This document shows positions 1,337 to 19,940 of a stretch of 64,000 nucleotides of DNA, piece after piece. The translations under genes and the position numbers were made by a program. The notes under the pieces are model-generated. The model searched no databases. It was not told the DNA's origin and saw nothing but the letters and a program-made list of their open reading frames with translations. Each line of letters begins with the position of its first letter. The first letter of the stretch is position 1. The DNA lies in IMG/VR virus record IMGVR_UViG_3300032050_000004, positions 1 to 64,000 of that record; one strand, given 5' to 3'.

Positions 1337-1435
1337 AAAAATGTAAATTAGTTTTTGAATATCGTATATCTCTTTGGGATTTGACCCCAGTTTTCCCCGG
1401 GATCGCCTGCGGGAAACATCTTGGATACAGCGGGA
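1337..1435. repeat. Phased intergenic element copy A (right half-site plus arm)
   Basis: ATGTAA 1341, N16, CGTATATCT ending 1371; CAG/CGG/CTG at 1388, 1398, 1407, 1428. Confidence 0.85.
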
Positions 1436-1436
1436 T

Positions 1437-1470
1437 AAAAAAAAAGGGCTCGGAAACCCGAACCCTTTTT
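1437..1470. terminator. Bidirectional intrinsic terminator
   Basis: A-run, GGGCTCGG/CCGAACCC hairpin, T-run. Confidence 0.8.
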
Positions 1471-1841
1471 CATTTAATTTTCTTAATCTAAACACACATT
1501 GTTGTTTTTACAAACTTCCTTGTTTTAAGGAAATTACGAATAATTGTAATTTTAGAGGTAAGTCCATTCACCTTTCGATGATTTCTGACACTCTCCATCA
1601 TTTCTTCGTGTATTCGCAAATTAGCATTGTCATAGTTCGCAGTTTTTAAGTTACTTCCAAACATTGACTTAATAATAATTTCGTTTTGTTCGTCTATGCT
1701 TCTTTTCATTTTAATTATTTTAGTTTGTTTCAATACGGATTTTATTAGAAAAGGTTGAACGAAAATAATAAAATTTTATAATTTATTATAATTTTATTTT
1801 AATTAAATCTAAATCATCTCATTATCAAACTATTTAATTAA

Positions 1842-1935
1842 GAAATGTAAATTACTTTTTTCAATTCGTATATCTGATCGAAAATAACCCCCTGTTTTCA
1901 CCAGACACGGGCTTCTGAGTTCCAGAAACGGGTAG
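1842..1935. repeat. Phased intergenic element copy B (right half plus arm)
   Basis: ATGTAA 1845, N16, CGTATATCT ending 1875; CTG 1892, CAG 1902, CAG 1923; terminator at 1941-1973. Confidence 0.85.
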
Positions 1936-1993
1936 AAAACAAAAAACCCCCAACTTTTCAGTTGAGGGTTTTGTATTCACCTTTGATAAATTA

Positions 1994-2878
1994 CTAATAC
2001 TTTATTTTTTCAGTAATAGGTTTAATGTATTCATACAATTCATACTTAACACATAAGTTTACTAATTTGCCTTTTACCGAATAAAACTTTTCTTCATCTT
2101 CACAATTTTCAAATATACTTTCTAAAAAAGTATCCCTTCTTGTTTCATCAGTAATAATATCTGCAACATCTTCTTCTAATTCATTATCCCATTCTTCGTT
2201 TGAATAATAAGATAAACTCCAACCCAAATGTTCACTCATATCACCATCACTTTTTATACTTAAAGCAAATTTAGTTGCTTCGTAACCATTAGGTAAATAT
2301 TCTTTGACCAAATTACCATTGTCAAATACATAAATCCCACAATTATTTCCAATATCCTCATCAGCAAACTTCACTTCAAATAATAAATCAGGATATAATT
2401 CTGCAAGTTTATGAATGACTGGAAAAGGAGTTGACCACGCAGTATCGAATGAAATTGAATTTTCGCTTATTTGATAGTTGTCATAAGAATTCCATTTAGT
2501 TCCCCAATTAGCAATACTCCAACCATACCAATTAGCGTGTCCATATTTTTCAATGTTATCTAATGATATTTTTGCTTCCTCAAAATCTTGGGGAGAAAGC
2601 CTTTCATTTAAAAGTTGCTTTACACCCTCAACATCAGTAATGCCTTGTTCTTTAATCCAACTCCACTCCAACATTTCAGTAAATCTTTGAGTGTTATTTA
2701 TCAAAATACATATAGCATTATCAACATTACTTCCTGATGTAACCCTCAACGAAGGTGGCATAGGGAGAATTTTGTCAAAGTCAATTAAATTTTCATCTTC
2801 TTTTATGAAATCTAAAACTTCTTTTACCCTTTGCTCACTTCCTTTAATTGTGAGGATATTTGTAATGTGATTAGGCAT
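1994..2878 (-). CDS. DUF1281 / YubB (Api92-like) ferredoxin-like fold protein
   Basis: MPNHITN.L.I.G start, WYGWSIANWGTKWN and FDTAWSTP signatures. Confidence 0.8.
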   Translation of the reverse strand: MPNHITNILTIKGSEQRVKEVLDFIKEDENLIDFDKILPMPPSLRVTSGSNVDNAICILINNTQRFTEMLEWSWIKEQGITDVEGVKQLLNERLSPQDFEEAKISLDNIEKYGHANWYGWSIANWGTKWNSYDNYQISENSISFDTAWSTPFPVIHKLAELYPDLLFEVKFADEDIGNNCGIYVFDNGNLVKEYLPNGYEATKFALSIKSDGDMSEHLGWSLSYYSNEEWDNELEEDVADIITDETRRDTFLESIFENCEDEEKFYSVKGKLVNLCVKYELYEYIKPITEKIKY

Positions 2879-3916
2879 AATTTATTCTATTTTTTAATTA
2901 AAATTATTATTCTTCACTCTCTCCTACACCTACATCAATATAATCTATAACTTCCATACCATCCATTTTGGGGAGAAACAACTCCTCATCAGTATATTTA
3001 TCTTCCTTACGGAAACAAACCACAACTGAACCATCAACATCATCCAAATCAAATTTTGTATCATCAAATTCAATTAATGCTACAATAGTAACTACTGCTC
3101 GTTTAAGTGCCATAATTATTATTTTTTTTTAATCAATACGTTTATATTGAAAAAAGGTTTAAAATCTAATGAATAACCTTGAAATGCTCGTCATCAGTTA
3201 GGTGAACCCAACGAAATTCCATATTGTTATTTGACGCTATTCTCAATCCCAGCCAAACACCCGTTTTATTTTCAAAAAAAACCCGTTCCGTTATTGCTTC
3301 AACCACCCATTTCTCTTCTTTATGAATTGTCTTTTCTTTTGCAATTTCTGATATTGGTTCGAGTTTTACTTTATCACCTGTTCTTATATCTAACATAATT
3401 ATTTATTCTATTATCATTACGGATAAAATATAGAAAGGTCTAAAATAAAATTAATTATCTTTATTTTCAATAATTGAAACCATTTCTTTTAAATGATTTT
3501 CCAAATTGATAAGTTCATTTCTTATGTTTTGAATTTCCTCTAATGCTTTATCATATTTTCTGTTTGAGGTGAAAATGACTATTCTATCGCATTGAACTGG
3601 TATTGTCTTATTTGAAAGAACAATGATGTTTTGTTTAAGCTGATTGCTTCTTGTCATTTTATGTTGAGTTTGGTTTTTGTTTGTTCGATTATTTTTAAGC
3701 AAAAATCCTTCGCACTTTGTGGTGAACCATCAACAAACTCACAAGAGAAAGTATGATAATTAACTTCACTCACATAAACCTCATAAACAATAAATGAAAA
3801 TTTTAACTTCTCTATTTTAAGTGTACCATAATGCAATCTTGAATATCCGTTGAATTTTGACTTATCAAAATTGTCAAATTCAATTTTATAATTATCCATT
3901 TTATAGATTTTGTGTT

Positions 3917-4363
3917 TTACAATTTAGCAAGAAGAACATCCTCGTACTTGTAGTGTTTAGTCCCTTGTGTTTCCAAGAAATCAATCCTGTTCTTGAACCT
4001 TTTATTCATTGTATCCACAATAGTATAAACCCCACTCTTATGTCCTGCACCACTAATATACACCTTATCCCCATAATTGAAAACTCCTCCCCATCTTTTG
4101 AGCAAATCCCTTGAAACTGCAATCCATTTATGTTCCGACGCTTTATTTGGATTGATTTTGTACATACCAGCAGTTACCAAAGGGTCTTCATCACATTGAT
4201 TTACCACAGCATTATACATAGTTGCAGTTACCTTTACTGAATTTTGACTCTTAATTAAATCCTCTAATTGGTTAAGACGCTCATCATTTTCTTGTTGAAC
4301 GACCAACATATAAGTTGTATTTATAGCACTCAATACCATAAGGATATATACGGCTTTTTTCAT
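3917..4363 (-). CDS. 3D-domain (MltA-like) peptidoglycan hydrolase with N-terminal membrane anchor
   Basis: VTATMY, IAVSRDLL, YGDKV and VDTMNKRFKNRIDFL (three-Asp motif); hydrophobic N-terminus. Confidence 0.8.
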   Translation of the reverse strand: MKKAVYILMVLSAINTTYMLVVQQENDERLNQLEDLIKSQNSVKVTATMYNAVVNQCDEDPLVTAGMYKINPNKASEHKWIAVSRDLLKRWGGVFNYGDKVYISGAGHKSGVYTIVDTMNKRFKNRIDFLETQGTKHYKYEDVLLAKL

Positions 4364-4416
4364 AGTGGTTGGTTTTTAATCAATACTGATAAAAAACAAA
4401 AAGGTTTAAGAAAATA

Positions 4417-4525
4417 AAAATGTAAATTATCTTTTTAGGATCGTATATCTTGTCTGGAATTTGACACCTAGGGCCAGCAGTCCCGTCCAGTCAATTTCAG
4501 GATTCCACCAGAGAAAATCAGGACA
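4417..4525. repeat. Phased intergenic element copy C (right half plus arm)
   Basis: ATGTAA 4420, N16, CGTATATCT ending 4450; CAG at 4478, 4488, 4498, 4509, 4519; terminator at 4525-4561. Confidence 0.85.
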
Positions 4526-5513
4526 AAAAAAAAGAGAGCCAATTTCTTGACTCTCCTTTTTGAGATACGCAATGTTTTTCAATTCAAGTAATCAAACCCA
4601 AAGTGAATAAATCCCATTTCAATTAAATCATCATCAGACATCTTTTTAGGGTTTCTCCAAAAGTTAGGTTCTTGTTTATTCTCATCCTCTATAAGTTCAC
4701 TAATCCTTTTCAAAGCACCTTCATAGGTGAATTTCTTATCACCATCCGTTCTTTCAGTTTCAATAAACTCATATTTAATTCTCATATTAATCCATGTTTT
4801 GTTTAGCAAATTCAATCAATTTTTTAGCAAGTTCATCATCCAATTCATCCGTTACATCTTCATTATCCTCATCACGAATTTCAATTTCTTTGACAAAATA
4901 ACTATCGTAATCATCGTTGATAGTTACATGATAACAAGTATCCTCAACTTCAATTTCAAACTTGTGTGTTCTATTGATTACCTTGCTTATCAGTTCCATT
5001 GTTTATACAATTTTATAGTTTGTAATTTCTTCATCACTTATTTGGTCAAAAACATAATCTTTATCCAAACCCCTTACCGAAACCGAATCCACAATTTCTC
5101 CTTGTTTGTTAACCCAAATCTGAATATAAAAAGGTTCAGTATACCAAAGGTTGTTTTTTGCAACAGCACTCCAAGTTGTTTTGTGATGGTCAAATTCCTT
5201 TTTGCTAATGTTCATAGTGTTTGGTTTTTTTAATCAATACGAATAAAAAATAGAAAGGTTTAATTTTTTAGATTATTTTTTAATATATTTGTCATAAAAA
5301 ATTCCAAATCTGCCCAAAGTAGTTTTTCAGGAATCAAATTTGTATCTACACAACTCTTTTCATGTTTTGAATACATATATTCTATGAAATCACTCCAACA
5401 TGATTTGCAAACATTTCCAATAGATTGATAAGTGTTATTACAATTTTTGTTTTCACACCCTATTCTTGAACATTTGTTAAAATCCATATTAATACCAATT
5501 AGGATAGAAAAGG

Positions 5514-5858
5514 TTACTCCTCTTTTGCTTTTTTAAATTTATATTTTTTAATTGTGGTTCTTCCTAAACCAAATTTTTCCATTGTTTTTTTAACAGTGTT
5601 AGTTTTTGTGAACTCATAAATTTGTTCTTTGACCTTTTCAGATACGAACTCTACTTTCATTCCAGTATCAGTCAAATTTTCATTTTGACAATGATAATTA
5701 ATAGTTGATTTTGAACACTTCAATTTTTTTTGAATATCACGATAAGAATAACCTTCGTTTCTTAATTTTAAAATATCTTCTTTAATTCCCCTTCTACCAT
5801 TTTCGTGCAATCGGTCTTTATTGGAATTGTTAATTACAATTACGTGTTTAGTTGCCAT
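5514..5858 (-). CDS. Helix-turn-helix DNA-binding protein
   Basis: ILKLRNEGYSYRDIQKKLKCSKSTINYH is a classic HTH; a second HTH-like segment lies near the C-terminus. Confidence 0.7.
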   Translation of the reverse strand: MATKHVIVINNSNKDRLHENGRRGIKEDILKLRNEGYSYRDIQKKLKCSKSTINYHCQNENLTDTGMKVEFVSEKVKEQIYEFTKTNTVKKTMEKFGLGRTTIKKYKFKKAKEE

Positions 5859-5909
5859 ATTTTGTTTTTTAATTTAAATTAATGTCTAAAATATAAATTA
5901 AGGTTACAA

Positions 5910-6125
5910 TTAAGATTGTAAAAATCTTTTGTCCTTAACAAACTTCAAATGTCTTGCTTCATCCTTTGTCAAACCCACGAACTCACTTGGGGAGAATGAA
6001 ATCTCATCGGGGTAATAGTCAAAGAGATATTCTTCCACCCCATTTTCCAAAGTAACGTGAACTTGGGGCATAGGGTCAAATAAACTTTTAGGCATTGCCG
6101 TAATTCGTGCTGAAATTATTTTCAT
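5910..6125 (-). CDS. Conserved small phage protein
   Basis: LFDPMPQV...LFDYYPDEISF..SEFVGLT pattern; clean ORF behind a class-1 promoter. Confidence 0.55.
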   Translation of the reverse strand: MKIISARITAMPKSLFDPMPQVHVTLENGVEEYLFDYYPDEISFSPSEFVGLTKDEARHLKFVKDKRFLQS

Positions 6126-6467
6126 AGTTATCTTGTTTTTTAATCAATACGTTTTTAGGGAGAAAAGGTTTAAGATTTATAAATTATAAATGAGTAAAAC
6201 TCCCACAACCCATACATTGAATATAAGGTTTACCGCTATCTTTTATGGTAGGACTTTCCTTTGGTAAGATTATCCATTCAGTACCTTTGCAATCGTAACA
6301 CTCGCAATTAGGTAATCTCTCATCAAGGGTAAGCTGGTTAGCTATTCTTTCAGGATATACTGATTTTAACACATCAGCTTCAGGAATTTCTACTAATACC
6401 GATTGATAGAACTTTGACATAATTGATTTTTTAATCAATACGAATCAAAGTAAAAAAGGTTTAATTT

Positions 6468-6731
6468 TTAATTTAAAATTATTTGAAAAAATTGAAATCT
6501 TTCCGACTTAAATGCTTTTATATTATCGGTAGGATTTATTTCATCACCATTTCTATCAACTATGGTAACTGCCATTTCGTTGGTATTTAAGGAATCGGTG
6601 ATATACTTTAACTTATAAACTCTGTTCTTTTGGATCCACCTATCAGGTGTGAATTTTGGTAATGAATCATCTATACAAAATGCGAAAACATTAACGAAAG
6701 AAGCTGGTGCTATTAAATCTGCCATACCCAT
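6468..6731 (-). CDS. Hypothetical protein with late-type TATTTAT upstream
   Basis: ORF track; ATAAATA on + at 6741-6747; divergent from the DUF5856-like gene. Confidence 0.5.
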   Translation of the reverse strand: MGMADLIAPASFVNVFAFCIDDSLPKFTPDRWIQKNRVYKLKYITDSLNTNEMAVTIVDRNGDEINPTDNIKAFKSERFQFFQIILN

Positions 6732-6785
6732 ATGTTTATTATAAATAGTTTTTTTTTCGGTCTATTTATAATAAAATTAAAAAAA

Positions 6786-7157
6786 ATGCACCACAAAAGC
6801 GTAATAAAAATAATGAATTTTCAGCAACAAATGAGAATTCTTCATTGGCAAACCACTTCTTTTGCTCGTCATAATGCCTATGGTGGCATATATGATAGCA
6901 TAGATGATTTATTAGATAGATTTGCTGAAATTTGTATGGGTAAATACGGAAGAATTGAGCTTAATGATGAAATTTCTGAGCTTAAACTTAAAAACATGAA
7001 AGACCTTTCCATAAATTCTTATTTAAATGATTTTTGTGAATTTCTTGTTGAATTAACCGGTGAATTTGACGATGAAAAAGATACTGATGTGTTAAATATC
7101 AGAGATGAAGTTCTTGCTGAAGTAAATAAATTAAAGTATTTACTTACTCTTAAATAA
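6786..7157 (+). CDS. DUF5856 ferritin/Dps-like four-helix protein
   Basis: LHWQTTSFARHNAYGGIYDSIDDLLDRFAEICMGKYGR and C-terminal LNIRDEVLAEVNKLKYLLTLK; TATTTAT at 6763; terminator at 7177-7206. Confidence 0.75.
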   Translation: MHHKSVIKIMNFQQQMRILHWQTTSFARHNAYGGIYDSIDDLLDRFAEICMGKYGRIELNDEISELKLKNMKDLSINSYLNDFCEFLVELTGEFDDEKDTDVLNIRDEVLAEVNKLKYLLTLK

Positions 7158-7587
7158 TACACTATGATTTAAGCTGAAAGGGGAGGAAGTTTTTCCTCCC
7201 TTTTTCATTTTTATATTTTTAATATGATACTATAACCCTTTCAAGTTTTTCTACAACCATACAATTACCAACTTTTTCTGCTTTCATTTTTGCAATCCTT
7301 AATGCTCTTTCATAAGTCATTTTTGCACCGTCAACTTTAATAGTGTCAATTACATCTCTGCGAGTAGTCATTACTGTTTTGACAAGTCGAATTATTTGTA
7401 TCGCTTCACAAACAACTGAAATGTCATTAATAGTTTCATTTTTTGAAACTGCAATCTCTGTAGTTTCCAATTTAGAGCCGAATAAATCAAACGAGTTTTC
7501 CATTTTTTCCTTTTTTTAATCAATACGCTTTTTAATTAAAAAGGTTTAAGCTGAATCGAACTGACTAAACCTAAACTTTTCAAATTT

Positions 7588-7730
7588 AGTTATACGAAAG
7601 AAAAAAGATATTTTACACTTTATAAAAATGTAAATTAGTTTTTTAAGATCGTATATCTGATTATAAATATCCACCAGTTTTCACCGTCGACTGCCAGAAA
7701 TTTCACCGTAAACCAAAATACCGAGTTTGG
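7588..7730. repeat. Phased intergenic element copy D (both halves, 9-bp spacer)
   Basis: TACG 7593, N16, TTACAC 7613; ATGTAA 7628, N16, CGTATATCT ending 7658; CAG 7675, CCG 7684, CAG 7695, CCG 7706. Confidence 0.85.
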
Positions 7731-7824
7731 CACATTTTTACTTCCGAAAATGTCTTGTAAAAGATTAACATAAAAAAGAAAAAGCCGCATCTCTGCGGCT
7801 TTATCAATATAATCATTCCTTTGA

Positions 7825-8418
7825 TTACACAATCTTTATTTTACGATTATCAATGTAAATGAATTTTACATTATCAATCCCCACATTGAAAGTTCCAAAT
7901 GCCTCATCACCTCTAATTCCCAAATTGTAACTTCCTTTTGTAGATTTAATCAAAAATGTTTTTAATTGCTCTAATTGAAATTCAGTCGCCTTAACTCCAT
8001 CAACATAATACTCCGTAAAAGTACTCTCGTTTGAATTAGGATTAGTATAAACCCTCAAATACTTAATTGCAGGATTATCTTTCTTTACAGCAATAACATA
8101 GTTATCTCTGCCGTCAGATGATTCCACATAAGTTGATTCAGGTTTATATTCACCCTCAATACCCTTTTGCTCCCTTTGATTGTTACCTTTAGTAGAAGCA
8201 CTTGTATTGCAACCAAAACCCCACTTTGAAACTTTACGAACTCTACCAATAAAAGGATTACCCCTTTTATTCATTTTAGGTTCAGTGTCCGAAACCATAC
8301 TTCCATAAGTATGACTACCACCACGAACATTTTCCATAAAGGAAATAAATTCATCTTTACTCATTACTTCGTGAGAAATCTGATTGCAGATTTGCTCCAT
8401 TCTTTGTTCTTTGGTCAT
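7825..8418 (-). CDS. Conserved phage hypothetical protein
   Basis: 197-aa ORF containing TEPKMNKRGNPFIGRVRK...NNQREQKG; class-1 promoter at 8443. Confidence 0.6.
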   Translation of the reverse strand: MTKEQRMEQICNQISHEVMSKDEFISFMENVRGGSHTYGSMVSDTEPKMNKRGNPFIGRVRKVSKWGFGCNTSASTKGNNQREQKGIEGEYKPESTYVESSDGRDNYVIAVKKDNPAIKYLRVYTNPNSNESTFTEYYVDGVKATEFQLEQLKTFLIKSTKGSYNLGIRGDEAFGTFNVGIDNVKFIYIDNRKIKIV

Positions 8419-8561
8419 TTTGCGATTTTTTTTAGGTTAATATCAATACGGATTTTTTTGTAAAAGGTTTAATAAAACCCCCACATATATAATACGCAGT
8501 AACACCACCAAATCTTTAGTGTAAAATTAAAATATTTTTTAACTTATTGAAAATCAGTATA

Positions 8562-8593
8562 AAAGAAAAAGTCCCGGACTTCGGGACTTTTTT
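8562..8593. terminator. Bidirectional intrinsic terminator
   Basis: AAAAAGTCCCG-GACTT-CGGGACTTTTTT. Confidence 0.8.
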
Positions 8594-8989
8594 CTAACCA
8601 CTATGAAACACAATAAACAATTATAGAACCGAAACAAATATACACAAATTACTTATTCTTAACACTATAACTGTAAGATGAAAAAATAGTCCTATTGACA
8701 AATTCTTTTGTGCTTTCGCTAAATTCAAAACATTTCAATCCGTGAAGAATATTTTTTTCTCCAATACAATCCACTTCTTTCATAAGAAAGGTAATGAATT
8801 TCTCATACACAATATCTTCTCTCATATTATATCTTTTGCTGATGTGAGCAGAAACCTTTTTTAGAGTTGGATGCTTTGTAACATAATCCTCAATCACTTT
8901 TCTTTGGGTAATCATATTGAGTTTAGTTTTAGTTTTACTTACAATACGGATAATTAAAAAAAAGGTTTAAGAAATTATTTTACAGTTAA

Positions 8990-12121: not shown

Positions 12122-12275
12122 AGATATACGAATATGAATATTTAAATTACATTATCAAAAATGTAAATTAGTTTTTTTAATTCGTATATCTTGTTTGGGA
12201 TTTGACCCCTGTAAACGCCAGATCCGGGCTAGGAAACAGGTTCTAGCGGGAGAGATTGGAAATTATGCGGGAGAG
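12122..12275. repeat. Phased intergenic element copy F (both halves, 8-bp spacer)
   Basis: AGATATACGA 12122, TTACAT 12147, ATGTAA 12161, TCGTATATCT 12182-12191; CTG 12209, CAG 12219, CTAG 12229. Confidence 0.85.
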
Positions 12276-12541
12276 ATAAAAACAAAAAACCCACAACTTC
12301 CGTTGCGGGTTTCAAGCGGGGGAGAATCTCAACCCCTATTATTTAAAGTATTTCTCTGTCTTTCATACTTTTTCCATCAGTTTTATTTGAAATTCCACTT
12401 TCTTCATTAATTCTCTTTGACAATCATCACACCTTTCCCTAAAAAACAATTTGAGATTAGGTTTATTATTATCACAATGTTTGCAAGGTTTCTTCCAAGC
12501 CTTGTCAAAGGCATTATCAGTAATCATACCTTTCATATCCT

Positions 12542-12754
12542 TTATTTTTCTTTTTCGTAACCAATTCCTTTGAAATTATAGTTTCCATTCTTTATTTCAG
12601 CAATATCAGCATCTAATGCTTGCTTATAATCGTCCCTTTTCTTTTCTGCATCCTTACAACTCATACAAATTACATCCTCGTTATACATTGACATAATTGT
12701 AACTCCATTTGTTGATTGGTGACATCGGTCACAATTTTCTCGGTACATTGACAT
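12542..12754 (-). CDS. Small Cys-rich (CxxC...CxxC) conserved protein
   Basis: CDRC...IMSMYNEDVICMSCK...GNYNFKGIG. Confidence 0.6.
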   Translation of the reverse strand: MSMYRENCDRCHQSTNGVTIMSMYNEDVICMSCKDAEKKRDDYKQALDADIAEIKNGNYNFKGIGYEKEK

Positions 12755-13290
12755 AGGTTTTGTTTTTTTTATTTATCAATAAATTCTAAACTTTTATAAG
12801 CAATATCCAATACTGCACCATTATCAAATCTTACTGCTACAAATGTATCCCAACTACCCCACATACCTACTTTATAATTTGGTATAGTTTTTCCACTTGA
12901 ACCCTCAATACATCTTGAATCATACCTTGTCAAATCAACTTTAAGTTTCACTTTTTTGGGTTTACCGCCTATTTGCATATTTCTTCTTTTTTGGTTATGC
13001 TATCAATACGAATAAAATTAAAAAAGGTTTAATTAAAAAACACAAATCATTAAAAAAACAATCGCAGCCAAAATTTGCATTCTATTCAATCCTTTTGAAA
13101 CTCCCTCTCTGCTCATAAAACTTGTCTGAACAATCATAACCAATGCTGAAACTGAAATTATCTTGTCAATCAATAAACACTCATCCCAAGGATGTTTTCC
13201 GAAATACAAAATAGAGAAACAATAAGCAAAATATCCTATGATTGAAAGATGAACTCTGAATGTTCTGAATTGAAGGTTTGTAATCATATC

Positions 13291-13731
13291 TTATGAATTA
13301 GAATTGCTCTTGTAAAATATATTGTATTGAATAGGTAGTCCTTGTGTTGAATTACACACATTCACAGTAGCAATAGAATCGTTTATATTGTAAGTAGAGA
13401 TAAATGGGTGTTCAAATAGATTGCCCGAAACTCTTTTTATTCCACCCTCAAAATAATAATTGAAAGTAAGATTTATTGAATTATCCTCATTTTTGAAATA
13501 CACACAATTCCCAAGTGTTCTTTCTTGATAATCTACATAATCCACAATTCTGTTAATCTTGTAAGGTTTGATATTATGTAGTTCATAATTTTGACCTTGA
13601 TAATTTACTTTGAAAAATAGATTAAAATCCAAATTATCTGAACCATAAACTCTTTCAGGACTGGTCAAAGGTTCTTTCTCGCAAGACGAACAAAGAAAGA
13701 CAATAGATAGAATTATTAGTAGGTTTTTCAT
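13291..13731 (-). CDS. Bacteroidota-type lipoprotein
   Basis: Lipobox MKNLLIILSIVFLCSSC-EKE. Confidence 0.7.
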   Translation of the reverse strand: MKNLLIILSIVFLCSSCEKEPLTSPERVYGSDNLDFNLFFKVNYQGQNYELHNIKPYKINRIVDYVDYQERTLGNCVYFKNEDNSINLTFNYYFEGGIKRVSGNLFEHPFISTYNINDSIATVNVCNSTQGLPIQYNIFYKSNSNS

Positions 13732-13778
13732 AGTGGTTATTTTTTAATCAATACTGATTTTTATTAAAAAGGTTTAAT

Positions 13779-14057
13779 TTAATCCCACTTTCTTACCATA
13801 TAAACATACGATGTATCAATATCCTCCAATTTGAAATTGGGGTTAGTCCTTCTTTGATTATCTACAACTTTCAAATCCATAGTATAGCACCAATCTTTTC
13901 TTTCTTGCTCACTCAATTCGTGTCCTACAAAGAATGAACTGCTCGCATAACCGAACTTTGACTTATCCAAAGTGTAGCAATGATTGTAAACATAATCTTC
14001 CTTTGTGCAAGATGAAAGAGTAAAAATTACTCCGATGATGATGATAAGTTTTTTCAT
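13779..14057 (-). CDS. Bacteroidota-type lipoprotein
   Basis: MKKLIIIIGVIFTLSSC-TKED; class-1 promoter at 14075. Confidence 0.7.
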   Translation of the reverse strand: MKKLIIIIGVIFTLSSCTKEDYVYNHCYTLDKSKFGYASSSFFVGHELSEQERKDWCYTMDLKVVDNQRRTNPNFKLEDIDTSYVYMVRKWD

Positions 14058-14464
14058 AGTGGTTGGTTTTTTAATCAATACGTATTTTATTAGAAAAGGT
14101 TTAAAATAAATATGATTAAATATCATATCTACTTATGTCAAATCCATAACCCATCTCACTACAAATTTTATTTACCCTTGAACAAATATGATATTCAGGT
14201 TCAGTATCATTTACCTCACTATGTTTCTCTGAAATCTTTTTCATACCCTCTGAAATCATTTGTATAACCTCTTCTTTTGTTACACGATACTTTCCTTTTA
14301 CTTTCTTTTCAATCTTCACAACAAGCGAATGACACATCTTATCACCCGATTTTGTAAACATTTCATAACTTGGGATTGATTGTTTGGTTGTGGTTTCCAT
14401 TGTGTTTAGGTTTTTCTATCAGTACGGATTGGGGAGAAAAAGGTTTAATTTACATAGATAATTT

Positions 14465-14662
14465 TCCACCAGTCGTCACCCTGAACTCACCAGTCATCCA
14501 CAGGGAGAGAATTAAAAACAGATATACGATCTTTAAAAGTTATTTTACATTTTTAGGGGAGAGATAAAAATGTAATTTAGTTTTTTCTATTCGTATATCT
14601 CTTGTGGAAATTACCACTGCTGTGGAATCAGGTGAATCGCCGCACGAGGCAGGATTAACAGC
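14465..14662. repeat. Phased intergenic element copy G (both halves, 19-bp spacer, two arms)
   Basis: CWG at 14470, 14481, 14491, 14501; AGATATACGA 14520; TCGTATATCT 14591-14600; CNG at 14620, 14629, 14640, 14650, 14659; terminator at 14663-14694. Confidence 0.9.
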
Positions 14663-14890
14663 AAAAAAAAAGACCGAACTTTCGTTCAGTCTTTGTCAAA
14701 CACCATTGGTGCCATTCCTATTGTTGTCGGGTAATCATCTTATTCATATTTGTAGTCCCCTTCGAATTTAAAACCCGAACTGAACCACCATAAAGATAGT
14801 CTTAATGACCAATACATATTCCTTCCGTGCATCCTTCCATTTACATAGCATTCGTATGCTTTCTTGATTCGATAACGATTTATTTTCATA

Positions 14891-15067
14891 TTAATTTTCC
14901 TCCTCCAATAATTGTTTAATTGATTCGATACATAAACTCATTTCGTGTTGAGGTGAACCCCCTTCTTCTATTTCACTTTGACATAATTCTACTAATCCAA
15001 TAACCTCATCTTTAAGGTTTGGGTGTTCGCTAATAAATTGCTTTGCAAATTGAATTACTTCTTTCAT
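14891..15067 (-). CDS. Small hypothetical protein (58 aa, not in the track)
   Basis: MKEVIQFAKQFISEHPNLKDEVIGLVELCQSEIEEGGSPQHE...; class-1 promoter at 15084. Confidence 0.6.
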   Translation of the reverse strand: MKEVIQFAKQFISEHPNLKDEVIGLVELCQSEIEEGGSPQHEMSLCIESIKQLLEEEN

Positions 15068-15481
15068 AGGTTTTATTTTTTAATCAATACGGAAATAAAT
15101 TAAAAAGGTTTAATTATTAAATAAAAAAAGGGTTCGGTAACCAGCCGAACCCCTAACCATAAAAAACCACCTATGAACCACGAACTTTCTTTATTTCCTT
15201 GCCTTTTCTATCAATACTAATTTAATTTGAAAAGGTTTATTTTTTTTTATTTTTTTTATACTTGCTTTTCTAATAATTATATTTTATTTTAGTTAAAGAT
15301 TAAGCATTACTATTATTGTTTGCTTTAGTCATAGTGTTTTGTTTTGTCCGTAGCCCGTTTAGTCACGGGCTATGGTTTTTTTAGAAGGTGTTGATTGTGT
15401 GAATGAATGAACAAATCATAAATCCACCCAACACCATAACCACAAGCAACTCAATGGTGTATTTAATTTTATTTTCCATTT

Positions 15482-15676
15482 TCAATAGAAATTATAACAT
15501 CCATAACTTTTTACACTTTTGTTCCTCGAATACTTCTTAACATTTGAAGATGAATGTTTTTGAGTTTTTTGTTTGAATTTAGTTATGCTTGAATACGCAG
15601 CACATTGCTCTGTTGAACTACAAGAACTCAAAAACCAAACCGAAATAATTGCCGTTACAATAATTAATTTTTTCAT
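15482..15676 (-). CDS. Small lipoprotein with SC....C.AY motif and basic tail
   Basis: MKKLIIVTAIISVWFLSSCSSTEQCAAY. Confidence 0.65.
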   Translation of the reverse strand: MKKLIIVTAIISVWFLSSCSSTEQCAAYSSITKFKQKTQKHSSSNVKKYSRNKSVKSYGCYNFY

Positions 15677-16191
15677 ATATATAAAGTTTTTAGTTTTCAA
15701 ACAAATAAAACATACCAAAATTGTGTATCCCAACAATGCTTACAACCACATTTCCTTTATTGTCTTTGGGAGCATTCTCAACCATAAATTGAACTGCCCT
15801 CATTTCAGCAATCTTTTGAATAAACTCTTTTAGAGAATTGCTAATTTCGTTATTTTCGTTTTCTTCTTTCATAGTTTTAGGTTTTTAATCAATACGGAAA
15901 TAAATTAAAAAGGTTTATTAGAATCGTAAACTAATTTCATATAGAAATCGCTCACTTCATCCATATCATCAGATTGAAATACTACATTATACCAATCTGA
16001 CCGATATTCACCACCCGAAGTCATAAACATTTTATTATCTTCTTTATTAAGATAAATTACAAATTTCTTTTCAGTATTTGATAGAGGAGGATTTGGGTTA
16101 AATTCTTGTTCTTTGGTCTTTTTCATAGTTCTTGGTTCTTACAATCAATACTTATATTATTAGAAAAGGTTTGAATTAAATTGAAATTTTT

Positions 16192-16430
16192 CTCCCTGAT
16201 AAACATCCTGATTTTTACTGGATCAATCCTGAGAACTGGCGTTTTACAGGGGAGAGTTTTATAAAAGATATACGATATTAAATTTCTAATTTACATTTTT
16301 AGGGGAGAGATAAAAATGTATTTTACTTTTTTTAATTCGTATATCTTGTTTGGAATTTTTCCGCCTTCCAGCTCGAGTTCAGGCTGAGGAGAGGCTCAAG
16401 CGGGAGAAGTCAAAGTTCAGCGGGGGAGAA
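16192..16430. repeat. Phased intergenic element copy H (both halves, 19-bp spacer identical to copy G)
   Basis: CWG at 16196, 16208, 16218, 16229, 16247; AGATATACGA 16266; TCGTATATCT 16337-16346. Confidence 0.9.
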
Positions 16431-16725
16431 TAAAAACGAAAACCCCCACCTCTTGCGAAGCGGGGGTCTTATTTTATTTAGCGGGGGGAGTGCCATATAA
16501 GGCGAGTTCCATTTTCCCCTATCGAAGTGCCGTTGGGTCAATTCGGCTTGTCTATATCGGCTCGGATTTTAATGCCCTGCCTATCGGGAACCCTTTTAGT
16601 TTCTATATATTTTATAAAGATAATTATTAAGATTTAATTTCGGGGGGACTCTTGTTCATCTATATTCGGATTAAGCAATGTTTTGATTTTTTTTATCATA
16701 TAGGGTTATTTTGAATTTACTATCG

Positions 16726-16905
16726 CTAATATCGAAGTTTCGCACGTTTCATTCCTTTCGCAGCAGCCACACTTGGTCGATGCTTGTGATTGTTATATTT
16801 ATGTTTTCCCACATCACGATACGCCCAACAAGTTTCAGTAGATGCACAAGAAGTCATTGTAAGACCATATCCGATAATCATTACAGCAAGAAGGAGTTTT
16901 TTCAT
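16726..16905 (-). CDS. Small lipoprotein (59 aa, not in the track), paralogue-like to 15482-15676
   Basis: MKKLLLAVMIIGYGLTMTSCASTETCWAYRDVGKHK...; class-1 promoter at 16931. Confidence 0.65.
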   Translation of the reverse strand: MKKLLLAVMIIGYGLTMTSCASTETCWAYRDVGKHKYNNHKHRPSVAAAKGMKRAKLRY

Positions 16906-16976
16906 AGTGTTTGTTTTTTTTGTTATACTATCAATACTTTTTTAATTTAGAAAGGTTTAAGATATTTCAATTTTAT

Positions 16977-17246
16977 TTACAAATAATCACTTCCGTTATT
17001 GAGTGTTGTTTTACTTTTAATGAACTCCATTACTTTGTCAGCATAATAAGATGAAGTCAATTCGTTCAGATAGCTCAAAGTTTTCCAATAAGCATCATAT
17101 TCATTTGTCATAAAATTTCCTCCAACAACTTCCTTTTTACTATTGTAGTCAAGTGCTTTAATTGAAAGTGCATTTCCGTTCAAGTCAACCTTGATAATTC
17201 CTCCAACCGCATATTCTCCAATCTTAAATGATTTTGTTGCTTTCAT
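16977..17246 (-). CDS. Hypothetical phage protein
   Basis: ORF track; class-1 promoter at 17262. Confidence 0.55.
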   Translation of the reverse strand: MKATKSFKIGEYAVGGIIKVDLNGNALSIKALDYNSKKEVVGGNFMTNEYDAYWKTLSYLNELTSSYYADKVMEFIKSKTTLNNGSDYL

Positions 17247-17756
17247 AAGTTTGTTTTTTAATCAATACGATTTAATTAGAAAAAGGTCTAATTTTTATCA
17301 AAGAATTATAAATTAAACCACTAATCATAATTGATATAATCATATCGAACCAAACAAATAAAAACAAATCATCCCTTGTTGGTGTTTGAAATAATAAGAT
17401 ACTCATACAACAAATTGTATTTATTAGTAAAATACCAATCAAGGTTGCACCAATGTAATTTGACAAAGTTCTTTCCATATTTTTTTATTTTTTAGATTAG
17501 ATTAAAAAAGGGATATTGTTAATACCCCTTTTTATGTTTATCCTTTCTTGAATAAGTTTTTTTATCCCGATACACTTTTTCTTTGTGTATGTTATACATA
17601 CCCATTTCAAGCATAATATCTCGATGGATACCCTTATCCACTTTCACTTTTTCCTTTGCAGTATTTACCTTTTTCATTGTGTTTTAGTTTTTGTTGGTTC
17701 ATAGTTACAATCAATACTAATAAATTGTAAATAGGTTTAAGAAAAACAAAAAAAAT

Positions 17757-17890
17757 CCCCCCCAGAAACCAGCCCGTTTTTCTGGCTATGCTATAATATA
17801 GATATACGATATTAAAAAGGTATTTTACATTTTTTGCGTTATGCATTTTGTGTAATAAAATGTATTTTATTTATTTCAATTCGTATATCT
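17757..17890. repeat. Phased intergenic element copy I (29-bp spacer) at the minus-to-plus strand switch
   Basis: AGATATACGA 17800, TTACAT 17825, ATGTAT 17860, TCGTATATCT 17881-17890. Confidence 0.85.
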
Positions 17891-18016
17891 GAAATTTACA
17901 ATATCCAATTTTCAAGCACAAACACCTCAAAATATAATTTCATTTATTTTAATTTACCTTAAACCTTTTCCTATTAAATAAGTATTGATAATATAACCAA
18001 CAAAAAAACTACGAAA

Positions 18017-18664
18017 ATGAAAACCACCAACAAAACACTTAATGAACTTATCGCAAAGATTGTTTCAGTTTATGGATGTGATGAACAACAAGTATTGCGA
18101 CTAATTGAAATTACAACGGATATGTCAAAGGGTGCAAAATTTGCAACAATCAAAGATTATTCATCGGACAAATCTGAACATTCTGAAATTGCAAATCATT
18201 CTATTATCTTAAACTTTTCATATAAAAATATGAAAAAAGATGATAAAGAAACTTTGAGAACTTTTGATGTTAATTTAGTTGATGTAAATAAATTCAATTA
18301 TGATAGTATTGATACAAAAGGTATGGAATTGAGTGCATATAAAAATGAAGTAAGAAATTCACTACAAAATGCACTTTATGAAATAAATAACCCTAAACAA
18401 GTTGAAAGGGTAAATAATGATGATTACTTGAATGATATTTTAGTGTTTAATTGGAATACTGAAAGATTGTCAATAATTGGTCAAGGGGTAAAAAAAGAAA
18501 CAATAGTTGAAGGAGAATATAAAAAAGTAAAGTCAGCACCTTTGACAATAGCAAAAAAGTTGATAATGAAACAAGCAAATTTAAGAGTTGATAAATATCG
18601 TAGGTATGCAATAGACAATTTAAGTATTGTTAATTTGCAAGGGGAAAATTTGGAAATTCAATAA
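18017..18664 (+). CDS. Hypothetical phage protein
   Basis: 215-aa ORF behind a plus-strand class-1 promoter (17959); terminator at 18678-18705. Confidence 0.65.
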   Translation: MKTTNKTLNELIAKIVSVYGCDEQQVLRLIEITTDMSKGAKFATIKDYSSDKSEHSEIANHSIILNFSYKNMKKDDKETLRTFDVNLVDVNKFNYDSIDTKGMELSAYKNEVRNSLQNALYEINNPKQVERVNNDDYLNDILVFNWNTERLSIIGQGVKKETIVEGEYKKVKSAPLTIAKKLIMKQANLRVDKYRRYAIDNLSIVNLQGENLEIQ

Positions 18665-18774
18665 AACAAGGCAAATTAAAAGGGGAAAAAATTTCCCCTT
18701 TTTTTATATTAAATCTTAAACCTTTTTAATTAAAATAAGTATTGATATTGTAACCAACTAAAAAACTAAACACT

Positions 18775-18975
18775 ATGAGCAAGGTAAGATTAAAAAAATT
18801 CGCAGTAAATTTCTACAACAATCTTTTGAAGGAAGAAAAAAGAATAGAAATCGAAGCGTATCGCGAAAAGGAAGCAATCGAAATTGCAACTTTGGAATTG
18901 GACATCAAATGTTCGCATTGGACTGAAGAATTAGCAGAGTATTTTACACTACAAAAGGTTGAATTGGTCAAGTAG
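18775..18975 (+). CDS. Small hypothetical protein
   Basis: Class-1 promoter at 18716; terminator at 18996-19029. Confidence 0.55.
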   Translation: MSKVRLKKFAVNFYNNLLKEEKRIEIEAYREKEAIEIATLELDIKCSHWTEELAEYFTLQKVELVK

Positions 18976-19030
18976 GTTTGATAGGTTAAACTTGAAAAGG
19001 GGTTGAACGAAAGTTCGCCCCTTTTTTTTG

Positions 19031-19240
19031 TATCCTGAAATTTCCCGTCAAATCCCTGAACCCGACGGTAAAAAAACAGGTACGATAAAAAACAGATATA
19101 CGATATTAAATTTCTTATTTACATTTTTATAAGGGGTTTGAAAATGTATTTTACTTTTTTTTAATCGTATATCTTATTTGGAAATTTCTCGATCAACTGC
19201 CGGTTCCGGGCTGGAAAATTTCAGGATTGAACCCTGAGAA
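19031..19240. repeat. Phased intergenic element copy J (both halves, 19-bp spacer)
   Basis: CNG at 19035, 19045, 19056, 19066, 19077; AGATATACGA 19094; TCGTATATCT 19165-19174. Confidence 0.9.
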
Positions 19241-19397
19241 ATTTTTTTTCAAAAGATGATAAAGATTGGGATAGAAAATACGTATTACTATTATAAGGGG
19301 TTAATGAAAAATAAATTTTCATACCCACCAAAGATTTGGTTAGGTAAATACGTATTACTATTAGAAGAAGTCAAACAATATAAAACTCAAAAACAAA

Positions 19398-19793
19398 ATG
19401 AAAACAAATGTAGAACAACTTGTAAAGTTTGAAAATGAAACAATGAAATCATTAAATGAATTACGACCTATTGTATTTGACCTTTTTGGTAAAGGTGTAT
19501 TGGGGGTAAAAATGTTTCAAGATGAAAATTACCTTCAAATAACCAATTACACTTGGGGTAGTGAAGAATACATTGAGAAGTTGAATAAACTTGTAACTCA
19601 TTATGAATTTGCCAAAACTTTTTGGTACAATAATTTTAATGTACAAGAAGCAATAGACAAGTATAATCATTATTGTTGTGGTGTACTTATGAGAGAAGCA
19701 GAGAAGAAAAGAATTTTAACCTATGTTTATTTTATTTGGATGCTAAATATGGTAAGTGGAGAATTAAGGAATATCATTGTTTCAAGCAATTAA
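19398..19793 (+). CDS. Hypothetical phage protein
   Basis: ORF track; tandem variant promoters AAAGATT...AAATACGTATTACTATT at 19261 and 19330; terminator at 19814-19843. Confidence 0.55.
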   Translation: MKTNVEQLVKFENETMKSLNELRPIVFDLFGKGVLGVKMFQDENYLQITNYTWGSEEYIEKLNKLVTHYEFAKTFWYNNFNVQEAIDKYNHYCCGVLMREAEKKRILTYVYFIWMLNMVSGELRNIIVSSN

Positions 19794-19845
19794 ATGGAGT
19801 TTGGTAATTTGACAAAGGGGTTGAGAAATCAATCCCTTTTTTTAT

Positions 19846-19940
19846 TCCTGCTGTCCTCCTGTATCCGCCGCAGGTTACTGGCTGTTTACAGTAGGTATTT
19901 ATAAACAGATATACGAATACTAATTACTTATTTACATTTT
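19846..19940. repeat. Phased intergenic element copy K (left half plus arm only)
   Basis: CWG-rich arm 19848-19891; AGATATACGA 19907; TTTACATTTT 19931. Confidence 0.8.

What the first reader, a model, noticed from the sequence alone, without database searches (positions are those of the whole stretch)
1337..19940. Eleven-copy intergenic element: inverted 29-bp half-sites with spacers stepping by one helical turn
Seen: 18 half-sites ATGTA(A/T)-N16-CGTATATCT (one variant, D left), each with an exact 16-nt gap, found only between genes in 1.3-19.9 kb. At seven loci two halves sit back to back pointing outward. The spacers between TTACAT and ATGTAW are 8 (F), 9 (D), 19 (G, H, J), 29 (I) and 54 (E, due to a 2x23-bp duplication). 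Spacer sequence varies, but length moves in ~10-bp steps, so rotational phase appears to be selected. Established: ECF promoters such as B. subtilis SigW use TGAAAC-N16-CGTA, and back-to-back promoters negatively supercoil the DNA between them. Inference: a repeated, stereospecific nucleoprotein platform, such as multiple replication origins, DNA-entry or segregation anchors, or paired polymerase-loading sites. I know no described phage element with this architecture.
Basis: partly seen in the sequence, partly recalled or inferred. Interest (0 to 1): 0.92.

Follow-up and report, generated by a model that had tools for sequence, protein, structure and literature searches.

The report
Back-to-back phage promoters, not a platform
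The repeated inverted "half-sites" are most likely stand-alone promoters of an uncultured giant phage that carries its own alternative sigma factor; many are set back to back, and those facing against the genes probably make only short non-coding RNAs.

Summary
There are 17 exact ATGTAW-N16-CGTATATCT sites and one variant (0 expected by chance), all intergenic. Seven form outward-facing pairs with spacers of 8, 9, 19, 19, 19, 29 and 54 bp.

Each site looks like a complete promoter, which I call P1. Eight of the 18 are followed on their own strand by a gene, seven of them through a second promoter. Nine run 67-122 nt into a terminator hairpin that also ends the converging gene block, and one meets a weak hairpin with a T-run before its genes.

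The second motif, P2 (TTAAACCTTTT-N11-CGTATTGA), has 28 copies in the window and sits 15-30 nt before the start codons. It has the same 16-bp gap and the same CGTAT block, and it matches SigW-type ECF promoters.

In near-identical contigs of the same ~220-kb Bacteroidota phage, the P1/P2 block extends about 27 kb left of the window. It ends at a phage ECF sigma gene (best PDB match SigW) that sits behind a P2.

The ~10.5-bp spacing steps also appear in P1/P2 pairs (conservative n=11, p about 0.002).

The RNA segments downstream of P1 are a GC-rich paralogous family with no demonstrable consensus structure. Overall this is a new variant of a known kind, of moderate interest.

The parts
1341..1371 (+). 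P1 promoter, locus A. A divergent P2(-) lies 82 bp away at 1258.
   Evidence: Exact motif.
1372..1471 (+). Short RNA unit A: a 65-nt GC-rich body (GC 0.55), an A-run, then a terminator hairpin.
1845..1875 (+). P1 promoter, locus B. A divergent degenerate P2(-) lies 85 bp away at 1759.
1876..1974 (+). Short RNA unit B, ending at the bidirectional terminator at 1943-1972.
4380..4409 (-). P2 promoter back to back with P1 at locus C (10-bp spacer). It drives the gene at 4363..3917.
4420..4450 (+). P1 promoter, locus C.
4451..4562 (+). Short RNA unit C, ending at the terminator at 4528-4561.
7588..7618 (-). P1 variant (GTGTAA...CGTATAACT), locus D left. It is followed by a 38-nt leader, P2 at 7549 and the gene at 7503..7219.
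   Evidence: The variant and the 9-bp spacer are kept in relative L138.
7628..7658 (+). P1 promoter, locus D right.
7659..7805 (+). RNA unit D, ending at the terminator at 7781-7802. Relative L138 has a copy about 50 nt shorter.
9029..9059 (-). P1, locus E left. It is followed by a 58-nt leader, P2 at 8970 and the gene at 8915..8649.
9060..9113 (.). E spacer of 54 bp: 2 x 23-bp tandem units, each with an orphan TTACAT, followed by the 8-bp 'attgtaaa'.
9114..9144 (+). P1, locus E right.
9145..9237 (+). RNA unit E, ending at the terminator at 9208-9237. No real + strand gene lies beyond it.
12122..12152 (-). P1, locus F left. It is followed by a 29-nt leader, P2 at 12092 and the SprT-like gene at 12062..11589.
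   Evidence: The relatives carry a diverged copy with the same N16 and the same 8-bp spacer.
12161..12191 (+). P1, locus F right.
12192..12316 (+). RNA unit F, ending at the terminator at 12286-12313.
14520..14550 (-). P1, locus G left. It is followed by a 71-nt leader, P2 at 14448 and the gene at 14400..14116.
14570..14600 (+). P1, locus G right.
14601..14697 (+). RNA unit G, ending at the terminator at 14669-14694.
16266..16296 (-). P1, locus H left. It is followed by a 91-nt leader, P2 at 16174 and the gene at 16126..15905.
16316..16346 (+). P1, locus H right.
16347..16475 (+). RNA unit H, ending at the terminator at 16439-16470.
17800..17830 (-). P1, locus I left. It is followed by a 59-nt leader, P2 at 17740 and leftward genes.
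17860..17890 (+). P1, locus I right. It is followed by a 68-nt AT-rich leader, P2(+) at 17959 and the gene at 18017..18664.
19094..19124 (-). P1, locus J left.
18994..19093 (-). RNA unit J-left, the best-folding body (z = -3.45), followed by a terminator hairpin.
19144..19174 (+). P1, locus J right. It is followed by a 76-nt hairpin-plus-T-run leader and then the + strand genes at 19256..19793.
19907..19937 (-). P1, locus K. It is single, with no partner promoter found.
19811..19906 (-). RNA unit K, ending at the terminator at 19814-19839 that also closes the + strand genes.
1153..18745 (.). Array of 28 P2 promoters (TTAAAC-N16-CGTATTGA): 26 on the - strand and 2 on the + strand (17959, 18716). 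Each lies 15-30 nt before the ATG of a small gene.

Best explanation
Each 'half-site' is a complete, autonomous promoter, here called class P1. Its consensus is aAAA-ATGTAAATTA-(N12)-TCGTATATCT, that is, a -35-like block and a -10-like block with a fixed 16-bp gap. It belongs to an uncultured ~220-kb jumbo phage that most likely infects Bacteroidota.

P1 is one of two related promoter classes that run a ~47-kb block of small genes. The other class, P2 (TTAAACCTTTT-N11-CGTATTGA), is a textbook SigW-type ECF promoter and sits in front of almost every gene. P1 sits at the borders of gene modules. The phage carries its own ECF sigma factor at the left border of the block, behind a P2. The likely cascade is host RNA polymerase plus phage ECF sigma acting on P2, and on P1 either through the same sigma or through a second, unidentified specificity factor.

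A P1 that points with the genes feeds through a 29-91-nt leader into a P2 and the gene. A P1 that points against the genes transcribes only a GC-rich segment and then meets the bidirectional terminator that closes the neighbouring converging module. This should yield short non-coding RNAs of about 90-150 nt.

An 'inverted pair' is simply two such promoters back to back. The shortest spacers (8-10 bp) equal the two A-rich upstream tracts abutting each other. The tendency of longer spacers to add about 10.5 bp would keep two bound polymerases on compatible faces of the helix, or preserve upstream A-tract bending.

Shown: the motifs, their fixed geometry, their orientation relative to genes and terminators, the conservation pattern, and the sigma gene. 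Inferred: that transcription starts there, which sigma reads which class, that the short RNAs accumulate and act, and why the spacing is phased.
For: Motif reality.

Orientation: searches cover all 23 P1 sites.
- Ten point with genes, eight of them in tandem with a P2 29-91 nt downstream. J-right and the site next to the sigma operon reach their genes without a detected P2.
- Thirteen point against the genes and reach a stable hairpin 67-122 nt downstream that is preceded by an A-run of 6-8 of 8 bases.
- Terminator-like sites number 30 against 6.8 expected in 1-20 kb.

Second class: searches find P2 in 49 copies with the same fixed N16 and the same CGTAT block, 15-30 nt before start codons. 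In relative L129 a P2 precedes a tRNA-like gene, so P2 is a transcription signal rather than a translation signal.

Literature: PMC5758882 gives ECF promoters as -35 'AAC' and -10 'CGT' with a 14-17-bp spacer, and SigW-type as tGAAACnTTTt ... CGTA.

Sigma factor. A 225-aa sigma70-ECF protein (TIGR02937, E 1e-25; best PDB match B. subtilis SigW 5wuq, E 1e-14) is encoded in a contig 99.5% identical to the window's phage, about 26 kb left of window position 1. A P2 lies upstream of its operon and a P1 diverges from it. Neither motif occurs further left.

Conservation. In relatives at 74-94% identity the two blocks stay fixed while the N16 and the inter-promoter spacers change in sequence but keep their length (D 9->9, F 8->8, A 82->82).

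Autonomy. Nine of 23 P1 sites have no P1 partner. Seven of these sit back to back with a P2: six at 10, 10, 20, 40, 82 and 85 bp, and one upstream of the sigma operon at 42 bp.
Against: There are no transcript data, so no start site is demonstrated.

P1 lacks the ECF hallmark AAC in its -35 block (ATGTAA, or TGTAAA with a 15-bp gap), so the sigma that was found may not read it. No second sigma turned up in the ~130 kb inspected.

On the P1 strand the terminators often have a poor T-run (0-6 T of 8). The 'short RNAs' could therefore partly read through as antisense transcripts.

The RNA bodies are no more stable than dinucleotide shuffles (mean z -0.6). RNAalifold finds no consensus structure. 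The bodies diverge about as fast as their flanks.

The sigmaA-like promoter proposed in front of the sigma gene is an imperfect match, and that motif is not enriched in the window.
Confidence: 0.75

Rival explanations
1. One reading: the inverted pair is one stereospecific nucleoprotein platform bound as a unit, such as a replication origin, a DNA-entry site or a segregation anchor.
For: Spacer lengths cluster at one helical phase. A ParB-HTH protein is encoded in the block. The cumulative GC skew turns near 17-21 kb.
Against: Nine of 23 sites have no P1 partner, and seven of those pair with a different motif. Every site has a strand-specific downstream partner, either a gene or a terminator. 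There are 23 copies spread over 47 kb, always at gene-module borders. Conservation is limited to two blocks with a free N16. The GC-skew turn coincides with the switch in gene direction at 17.8 kb. E (54 bp) is off phase.
Confidence: 0.05
2. The pairs are miniature inverted-repeat mobile elements (Correia/MITE-like) whose terminal repeats happen to carry outward promoters.
For: Inverted ~31-bp arms flank a short variable core. There are many intergenic copies. The H and J pairs are near-identical paralogues and the G and H cores are identical.
Against: The arm interiors (N16) vary while only two blocks are fixed, which is unlike terminal inverted repeats. Single arms are common. No flanking target duplications are visible by eye. 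Loci A, D and F are all occupied in the diverged relatives, with no empty sites seen. No transposase was found.
Confidence: 0.05
3. P1 is an operator, not a promoter. It would be a bipartite binding site for a phage regulator that controls the neighbouring P2 promoters or the terminators.
For: P1 lacks the ECF AAC. It always lies next to a P2, another P1 or a terminator. HTH proteins are encoded in the block, for example 5514-5858.
Against: P1 has the same 16-bp geometry and the same CGTAT block as P2. P1 sites that point against the genes have their own A-run, hairpin and downstream GC-rich segment. That segment occurs nowhere else (nhmmer), which is hard to explain for a pure operator. Sites such as K have no promoter nearby to regulate.
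Confidence: 0.1
4. P1 is a true promoter but is read by a different enzyme from P2, such as a host ECF sigma induced by infection or an unidentified phage factor. P1 and P2 would then be separate temporal classes, and the P1 sites facing against the genes would make antisense transcripts that shut the block down.
For: The -35 blocks and the extended -10 blocks differ (ATGTAAATTA / TCGTATATCT against TTAAACCTTTT / CGTATTGAT), and each is invariant within its class. The T-runs on the P1 strand are weak. P1 lies outside P2 in every tandem arrangement.
Against: No second sigma or polymerase was found in about 130 kb, although about 90 kb of the genome was not examined. This is a refinement of the best explanation rather than a contradiction of it.
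Confidence: 0.3

Closest known systems
ECF (group 4) sigma-dependent promoters, SigW type (tGAAACnTTTt-N-CGTA; PMC5758882)
   Same: The layout is bipartite with a fixed 16-bp gap. There is a CGTA -10 block and a T-tract just 3' of the -35. Adherence to consensus is very close. The sigma operon sits behind its own promoter type. P2 meets all of these.
   Different: P1 replaces AAC with ATGTAA/TGTAAA. Its T-tract lies 6 bp further downstream, and it has an invariant TCT after CGTATA. Both classes carry 9-11 conserved bases per block, more than is usual. The regulon is viral and covers about 70 promoters in 47 kb.
Phage-encoded sigma cascades using host RNA polymerase. Group 2 jumbo phages, including Bacteroidetes phages, lack their own polymerase but encode sigma factors (PMC7824862). 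From memory: SPO1 gp28/gp33-34, T4 gp55, phiEco32 gp36.
   Same: A phage sigma redirects host polymerase to a dedicated promoter class in front of blocks of phage genes.
   Different: Here the sigma is a full ECF type closest to SigW, and two sister promoter classes share one -10 block. Homologues at 25-30% identity are annotated 'sigma-W factor' in crAss-like and Lak phages. As far as I found, their promoters have not been described.
Topologically coupled divergent promoters (PMC5175336, PMC4469952)
   Same: The promoters are back to back and non-overlapping, and may belong to different sigma classes. Transcription from one can stimulate the other through negative supercoiling.
   Different: Coupling is not shown here. 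The spacers are much shorter (8-85 bp between the -35 blocks), and one arm often makes only a ~100-nt RNA.
Phage small RNAs with their own promoter and terminator (review PMC12197685; from memory, the 77-nt lambda OOP RNA)
   Same: These are short, terminator-bounded transcripts set against the neighbouring genes in an early region.
   Different: Here there are at least 14 paralogous copies behind one dedicated promoter class. The bodies do not overlap the converging coding sequences, and neither a target nor a structure could be shown.

Membership tests
ECF sigma-dependent promoter | -35 element containing AAC | tested here: not met
   P1 has ATGTAA (or TGTAAA if read with a 15-bp gap) in 31 unique variants. 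P2 has TTAAAC in 72 unique variants, so P2 meets this feature.
ECF sigma-dependent promoter | -10 element CGT(A/C) | tested here: met
   CGTAT is invariant in all P1 and in nearly all P2.
ECF sigma-dependent promoter | Fixed spacer of 14-17 bp between the blocks | tested here: met
   The gap is exactly 16 bp in all 23 P1 and all 49 P2. It is also kept in the diverged relatives.
ECF sigma-dependent promoter | T-tract proximal to the -35 (frequent, not obligatory) | tested here: met
   P2 has CTTTTT directly after AAAC. P1 has a T5-7 run, but it starts 6 bp later.
ECF sigma-dependent promoter | A cognate ECF sigma is present, usually behind its own promoter | tested here: inconclusive
   An ECF sigma (TIGR02937 1e-25; SigW 5wuq 1e-14) lies in the same phage species behind a P2, with a P1 diverging from it. 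The gene is outside the window. This fits P2. Whether this sigma reads P1 is unknown.
ECF sigma-dependent promoter | Transcription start 5-9 nt after the -10, dependent on the sigma | not testable with these tools
   This needs 5'-end mapping or in vitro transcription.
Terminator-bounded small RNA gene | Own promoter plus an intrinsic terminator within about 50-300 nt | tested here: met
   Fourteen P1 units have a hairpin (-6 to -15 kcal/mol) 44-122 nt downstream. The T-run on that strand is variable.
Terminator-bounded small RNA gene | Conserved secondary structure or covariation | tested here: not met
   Mean MFE z is -0.6 and only 2 of 22 bodies fall below -2.5. RNAalifold predicts 0 consensus pairs on 22 paralogues. 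There is no Rfam match.
Terminator-bounded small RNA gene | The copies form a homologous family | tested here: met
   The copies share positional words: CCxG at +15, GTTTTC/GTAAAC at +18 and TTCAGGAT near +45, all above shuffle maxima. They can be aligned. The profile finds only P1-linked copies in about 150 kb.
Replication origin / iteron array | Clustered directly repeated initiator sites beside an AT-rich unwinding element, at one or a few loci | tested here: not met
   The sites are inverted or single, number 23, are scattered over 47 kb at module borders, and each faces a gene or a terminator.
MITE / Correia-like element | Terminal repeats conserved along their length, target-site duplication, and presence/absence between strains | tested here: not met
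   The N16 inside the arms is variable. No duplications are seen by eye. Loci A, D and F are occupied in all relatives available, though few relatives exist.

The most novel reading that the evidence does not exclude
P1 may be a dedicated promoter class that drives a family of at least 14 short non-coding RNAs. One sits at the upstream border of almost every early-gene module of a giant Bacteroidota phage. Each is placed back to back, in helical register, with the module's own promoter. Firing of the short unit could then activate or time its neighbour through local supercoiling. Alternatively, the RNAs themselves could act as decoys against host defence or as antisense shut-off signals. This would be an RNA-plus-promoter module that has not been described for phages.
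Probability: 0.25. Interest if true: 0.7.

Novelty: new variant of a known kind. Interest (0 to 1): 0.45.

Why it matters
If confirmed, this would be a near-complete, sequence-defined regulon of a phage-encoded ECF sigma factor in an uncultured Bacteroidota jumbo phage: about 50 canonical promoters plus a sister class of 23.

Homologous 'sigma-W' genes are annotated in crAss-like and Lak phages. I found no description of their promoters, so this locus offers a template for reading the transcription programmes of that large group.

The strict consensus, the two classes that share one -10 block, and the phased back-to-back arrangement make it a clean natural test bed. It could show how ECF promoters discriminate at the -35 and how closely packed divergent promoters interact.

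The P1-linked RNA family is a candidate set of phage non-coding RNAs in a phylum where little is known about small-RNA biology.

Tried and rejected
- Rfam: window 1-22 kb at E<=5, and nine related loci at gathering score. This returned only noise and two tRNAs outside the window.
- A megablast of 1-20 kb against GenBank phages found nothing.
- A collection scan with the bare 14-base site gave 120 chance singletons and was useless.
- More specific P1, P2 and pair patterns hit only this phage species in IMG/VR and in metagenomes. There was one chance hit each in bacterial genomes and in another viral contig. No distant relatives were therefore available to test spacing.
- No sigma factor was found among 62 window ORFs or 33 ORFs of the left extension with Pfam and PHROGs, nor in 10 kb to the right of the window. 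It was found only by walking left.
- The Bacteroidota sigmaA motif TTG-N18-21-TAnnTTTG is not enriched in the window: 8 found against 7.4 expected.
- The idea that the RNA bodies are hypervariable cassettes was rejected, because they diverge about as fast as their flanks.
- The idea that unit E leads into a + strand gene (9250-9582) was rejected, because that ORF is antisense junk to a real - strand gene.
- CRISPR-repeat mimicry, CsrA-type GGA sponges and R-loop primers were considered for the RNA bodies from their appearance. Nothing in the data supports any of them.
- The HTH protein at 5514-5858 was checked as a possible -35 specificity factor. It has no informative match in the PDB.

Full report
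**Observation.** The pattern ATGTAW-N16-CGTATATCT occurs 17 times exactly in the window. None of 100 dinucleotide-preserving shuffles contains it. One variant, GTGTAA...CGTATAACT, lies at 7588-7618 on the minus strand. The other matches allowed at 3 mismatches are at chance level.

All 18 sites lie between 1341 and 19937 and between ORFs. Seven loci are outward-facing pairs, with spacers of 9, 54, 8, 19, 19, 29 and 19 bp. The 54-bp spacer is an 8-bp spacer plus two tandem 23-bp units, each of which copies the TTACAT block.

**What follows each site.** I read 170 nt downstream of every site on its own strand.

- Minus-strand sites in the minus-strand gene block (7618, 9059, 12152, 14550, 16296, 17830) are followed after 29-91 nt by a second conserved motif and then by the start codon of a small gene. 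The plus-strand site at 17860, which heads a plus-strand block, does the same.
- Sites that point against the local gene direction are followed by a segment of 45-125 nt, an A-run, and a stable hairpin. These are nine plus-strand sites from 1341 to 16316 and the minus-strand sites at 19124 and 19937. The segment has 0.46-0.55 G+C in most copies, against a background of 0.31.
- Terminator-like sites are enriched in 1-20 kb, 30 against 6.8 expected.
- In my own table all 14 such units have a hairpin of -6 to -15 kcal/mol 44-122 nt downstream. It is always preceded by 6-8 A in 8 bases, while the T-run on the P1 strand is variable at 0-6 of 8.

These hairpins are therefore the bidirectional terminators of the converging gene modules, and they are stronger for the gene strand.

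**The second motif.** TTAAACCTTTT-N11-CGTATTGA, here called P2, occurs 28 times in the window. Twenty-six copies are on the minus strand, and each lies 15-30 nt before an ATG.

Logos from 31 unique P1 and 72 unique P2 variants each carry about 46 bits. The information sits in two blocks, and most of the N16 is free. In relative L129 a P2 lies 13 nt before a tRNA-like gene, so P2 is a transcription signal and not a translation signal.

A published analysis of Bacillus ECF promoters gives a -35 'AAC', a -10 'CGT' and spacers of 14-17 bp. For SigW-type promoters it gives tGAAACnTTTt with CGTA (PMC5758882). P2 matches this closely. P1 shares the geometry and the -10 block but lacks AAC.

**Source and extension.** The window is the first 64 kb of IMG/VR contig 3300032050_000004, which is 222,069 bp long. 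Near-identical contigs of 108, 216, 216 and 58 kb from other samples tile the region to the left of window position 1.

On the joined map the P1/P2 block runs from about -27.6 kb to +19.9 kb. It holds 23 P1 and at least 50 P2, and neither motif occurs further left.

The cargo points to a jumbo phage of Bacteroidota. It includes two proteins with type IX secretion tails, a PAS histidine kinase with a receiver, OmpA, SOD and a SET domain, together with phage PHROG families.

**The sigma factor.** No sigma was found among the window's ORFs. Walking left from the GP88-like gene produced a 225-aa protein with Sigma70_r2 and r4_2 domains. It matches TIGR02937 sigma70-ECF at E 1e-25. Its best named profiles are SigW, SigY and a Bacteroidetes ECF subfamily, and its best solved structure is B. 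subtilis SigW at E 1e-14.

The contig carrying it is 99.5% identical to the window's phage over 13 kb. The gene sits about 26 kb left of window position 1 and is second in an operon headed by a P2. A P1 diverges from that P2 at 42 bp. This is the usual autoregulated layout of ECF sigma genes.

Homologues at 25-30% identity are annotated as 'sigma-W factor' in crAss-like phages and occur in Prevotella Lak megaphages. A comparative study notes that jumbo phages of the T4-like group, including Bacteroidetes phages, lack an RNA polymerase but encode sigma factors (PMC7824862).

**Autonomy of the sites.** Nine of the 23 P1 have no P1 partner. Seven of these sit back to back with a P2, at spacers of 10, 10, 20, 40, 42, 82 and 85 bp. 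Site K at 19937 and the site at -10755 have no divergent partner that I could find.

In relatives at 74-94% identity the two blocks are unchanged. The N16 and the inter-promoter spacers change in sequence but keep their length: D 9 to 9, F 8 to 8, A 82 to 82, and one case of 20 to 19. This is the pattern expected of promoters. It is not the pattern expected of the arms of one palindromic binding site or of transposon ends.

**Spacing.** A Rayleigh test was used, with the maximum taken over periods of 10-11 bp and a null of uniform spacers.

| Set | n | p |
|---|---|---|
| All divergent pairs | 14 | <0.0001 |
| Conservative de-duplicated set | 11 | 0.002 |
| Conservative set without the minimal 8-10-bp class | 8 | 0.027 |

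De-duplication is needed because the G and H spacers are identical and the H and J pairs are paralogues. The best period is 10.7-10.8 bp. E (54) and one P1/P2 pair (85) are off phase.

The minimal class equals two abutting A-rich upstream tracts (aAAA before ATGTAA). So there is a real but modest tendency to one helical register. My reading is that it keeps two polymerases sterically compatible, or preserves A-tract bending upstream of both promoters. Topological coupling of back-to-back promoters is documented elsewhere (PMC5175336, PMC4469952) but is not shown here.

**The RNA segments.** The segments downstream of P1 share positional words above shuffle maxima: CCxG near +15, GTTTTC or GTAAAC near +18, and TTCAGGAT near +45. 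They can be aligned. A profile built from them finds only P1-linked copies in about 150 kb. They are therefore a paralogous family tied to P1.

Evidence for function is weak, however.

- Their folding energies are not better than dinucleotide shuffles. The mean z is -0.6, and only two copies fall below -2.5.
- RNAalifold predicts no consensus pairs.
- Rfam has no match.
- They diverge about as fast as their flanks.
- By eye, some copies start with a 3-4-bp hairpin whose stem changes in a compensating way (GGG/CCC, GTGG/CCAC, GGAA/TTCC). I did not test this statistically.

Whether these RNAs act, are by-products of a promoter whose role is topological or insulating, or read through as antisense transcripts cannot be decided from sequence.

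**Rivals.**

- A replication or segregation platform is unlikely. There are 23 copies, they sit at module borders, they are directional, and some stand alone.
- A MITE-like element is unlikely. The arm interiors vary, no target duplications are visible, and no empty sites are seen among the relatives.
- A pure operator is possible but does not explain the dedicated downstream segment and terminator.
- A refinement in which P1 is read by another factor than the sigma found here is quite possible. It would make P1 and P2 separate temporal classes.

**Novelty and limits.** Phage-encoded sigma cascades and ECF promoters are known, and P2 is an ordinary new member of that kind. Three things look new: a sister class without AAC, its systematic back-to-back and phased placement, and its linked RNA family. 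I file the finding as a new variant of a known kind.

Everything about transcription is inferred. The sigma gene is outside the window. About 90 kb of the genome was not inspected. No independent lineage carries the motifs, so the spacing result cannot yet be replicated.

Noticed in passing
window 1153-18745 (28 copies); also L051, L124, L125 and L153: A second promoter-like motif, TTAAACCTTTT-N11-CGTATTGA (SigW-type ECF consensus), lies 15-30 nt before almost every small gene.
   Followed up: yes
L153 15817-16494 (-), about 26 kb left of window position 1 in the same phage species: A phage ECF sigma factor (225 aa, closest to SigW) is followed by a cREC_REC receiver-like protein and preceded by a 231-aa protein of unknown family. 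The operon is headed by a P2 with a divergent P1.
   Followed up: yes
L125 888-1007(-) and ~1100-1250(-); L129 991-1127(+): These are tRNA-like genes with good acceptor, D and T arms but a 60-85-nt insert where the anticodon arm should be. Rfam scores one at 37 bits, and ARAGORN either misses them or calls only a part. The one in L129 sits right behind a P2.
   Followed up: partly
window 19938-20450: This is a 510-bp non-coding stretch at the right border of the promoter block. It is G-poor on the + strand and has several A5-7T4-7 palindromes and an inverted repeat (19947-19962 / 20013-20028). Its role is unknown. It is a better candidate for an origin-like or boundary element than the P1 sites.
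   Followed up: partly
window 15128-15240 (-): A P2 here is followed by about 85 nt and a strong terminator instead of an ORF. P2 can therefore also head a short non-coding unit.
   Followed up: no
window 15348-15375 (+): A strong + strand terminator lies inside the - strand gene block, about 650 nt beyond RNA unit G. It may catch read-through from P1 at 14570.
   Followed up: no
window 12246-12325, 16420-16429, 14551-14569, 16297-16315: The word GCGGG(A/G)GAGA occurs four times in RNA units F and H (0.02 expected). GGGGAGAGATAAAA forms the identical G and H spacers, and its complement CTCCC recurs in several P2 spacers.
   Followed up: partly
window 26018-27893, 40106-42514, 45774-46895, 52403-52819, 61596-62321, 38654-39484: The phage carries host-like cargo: a PAS histidine kinase with an adjacent receiver domain, an M12 metalloprotease with PKD domains and a type IX secretion tail, an OmpA-like protein, a SET-domain protein, Fe/Mn superoxide dismutase, and a class II aminoacyl-tRNA-synthetase-like protein.
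   Followed up: partly
window 21958-24177 (+): A 739-aa protein has a GIY-YIG nuclease domain and five repeats of PHROG 20046. Distant relatives occur in Vibrio, Rhizobium and huge uncultured phages.
   Followed up: partly
window 31259-31837 and other upstream regions in 20-64 kb: Words like TATAAATA and ATATTTATA recur before genes outside the P1/P2 block. They may represent a third (late) promoter class.
   Followed up: no
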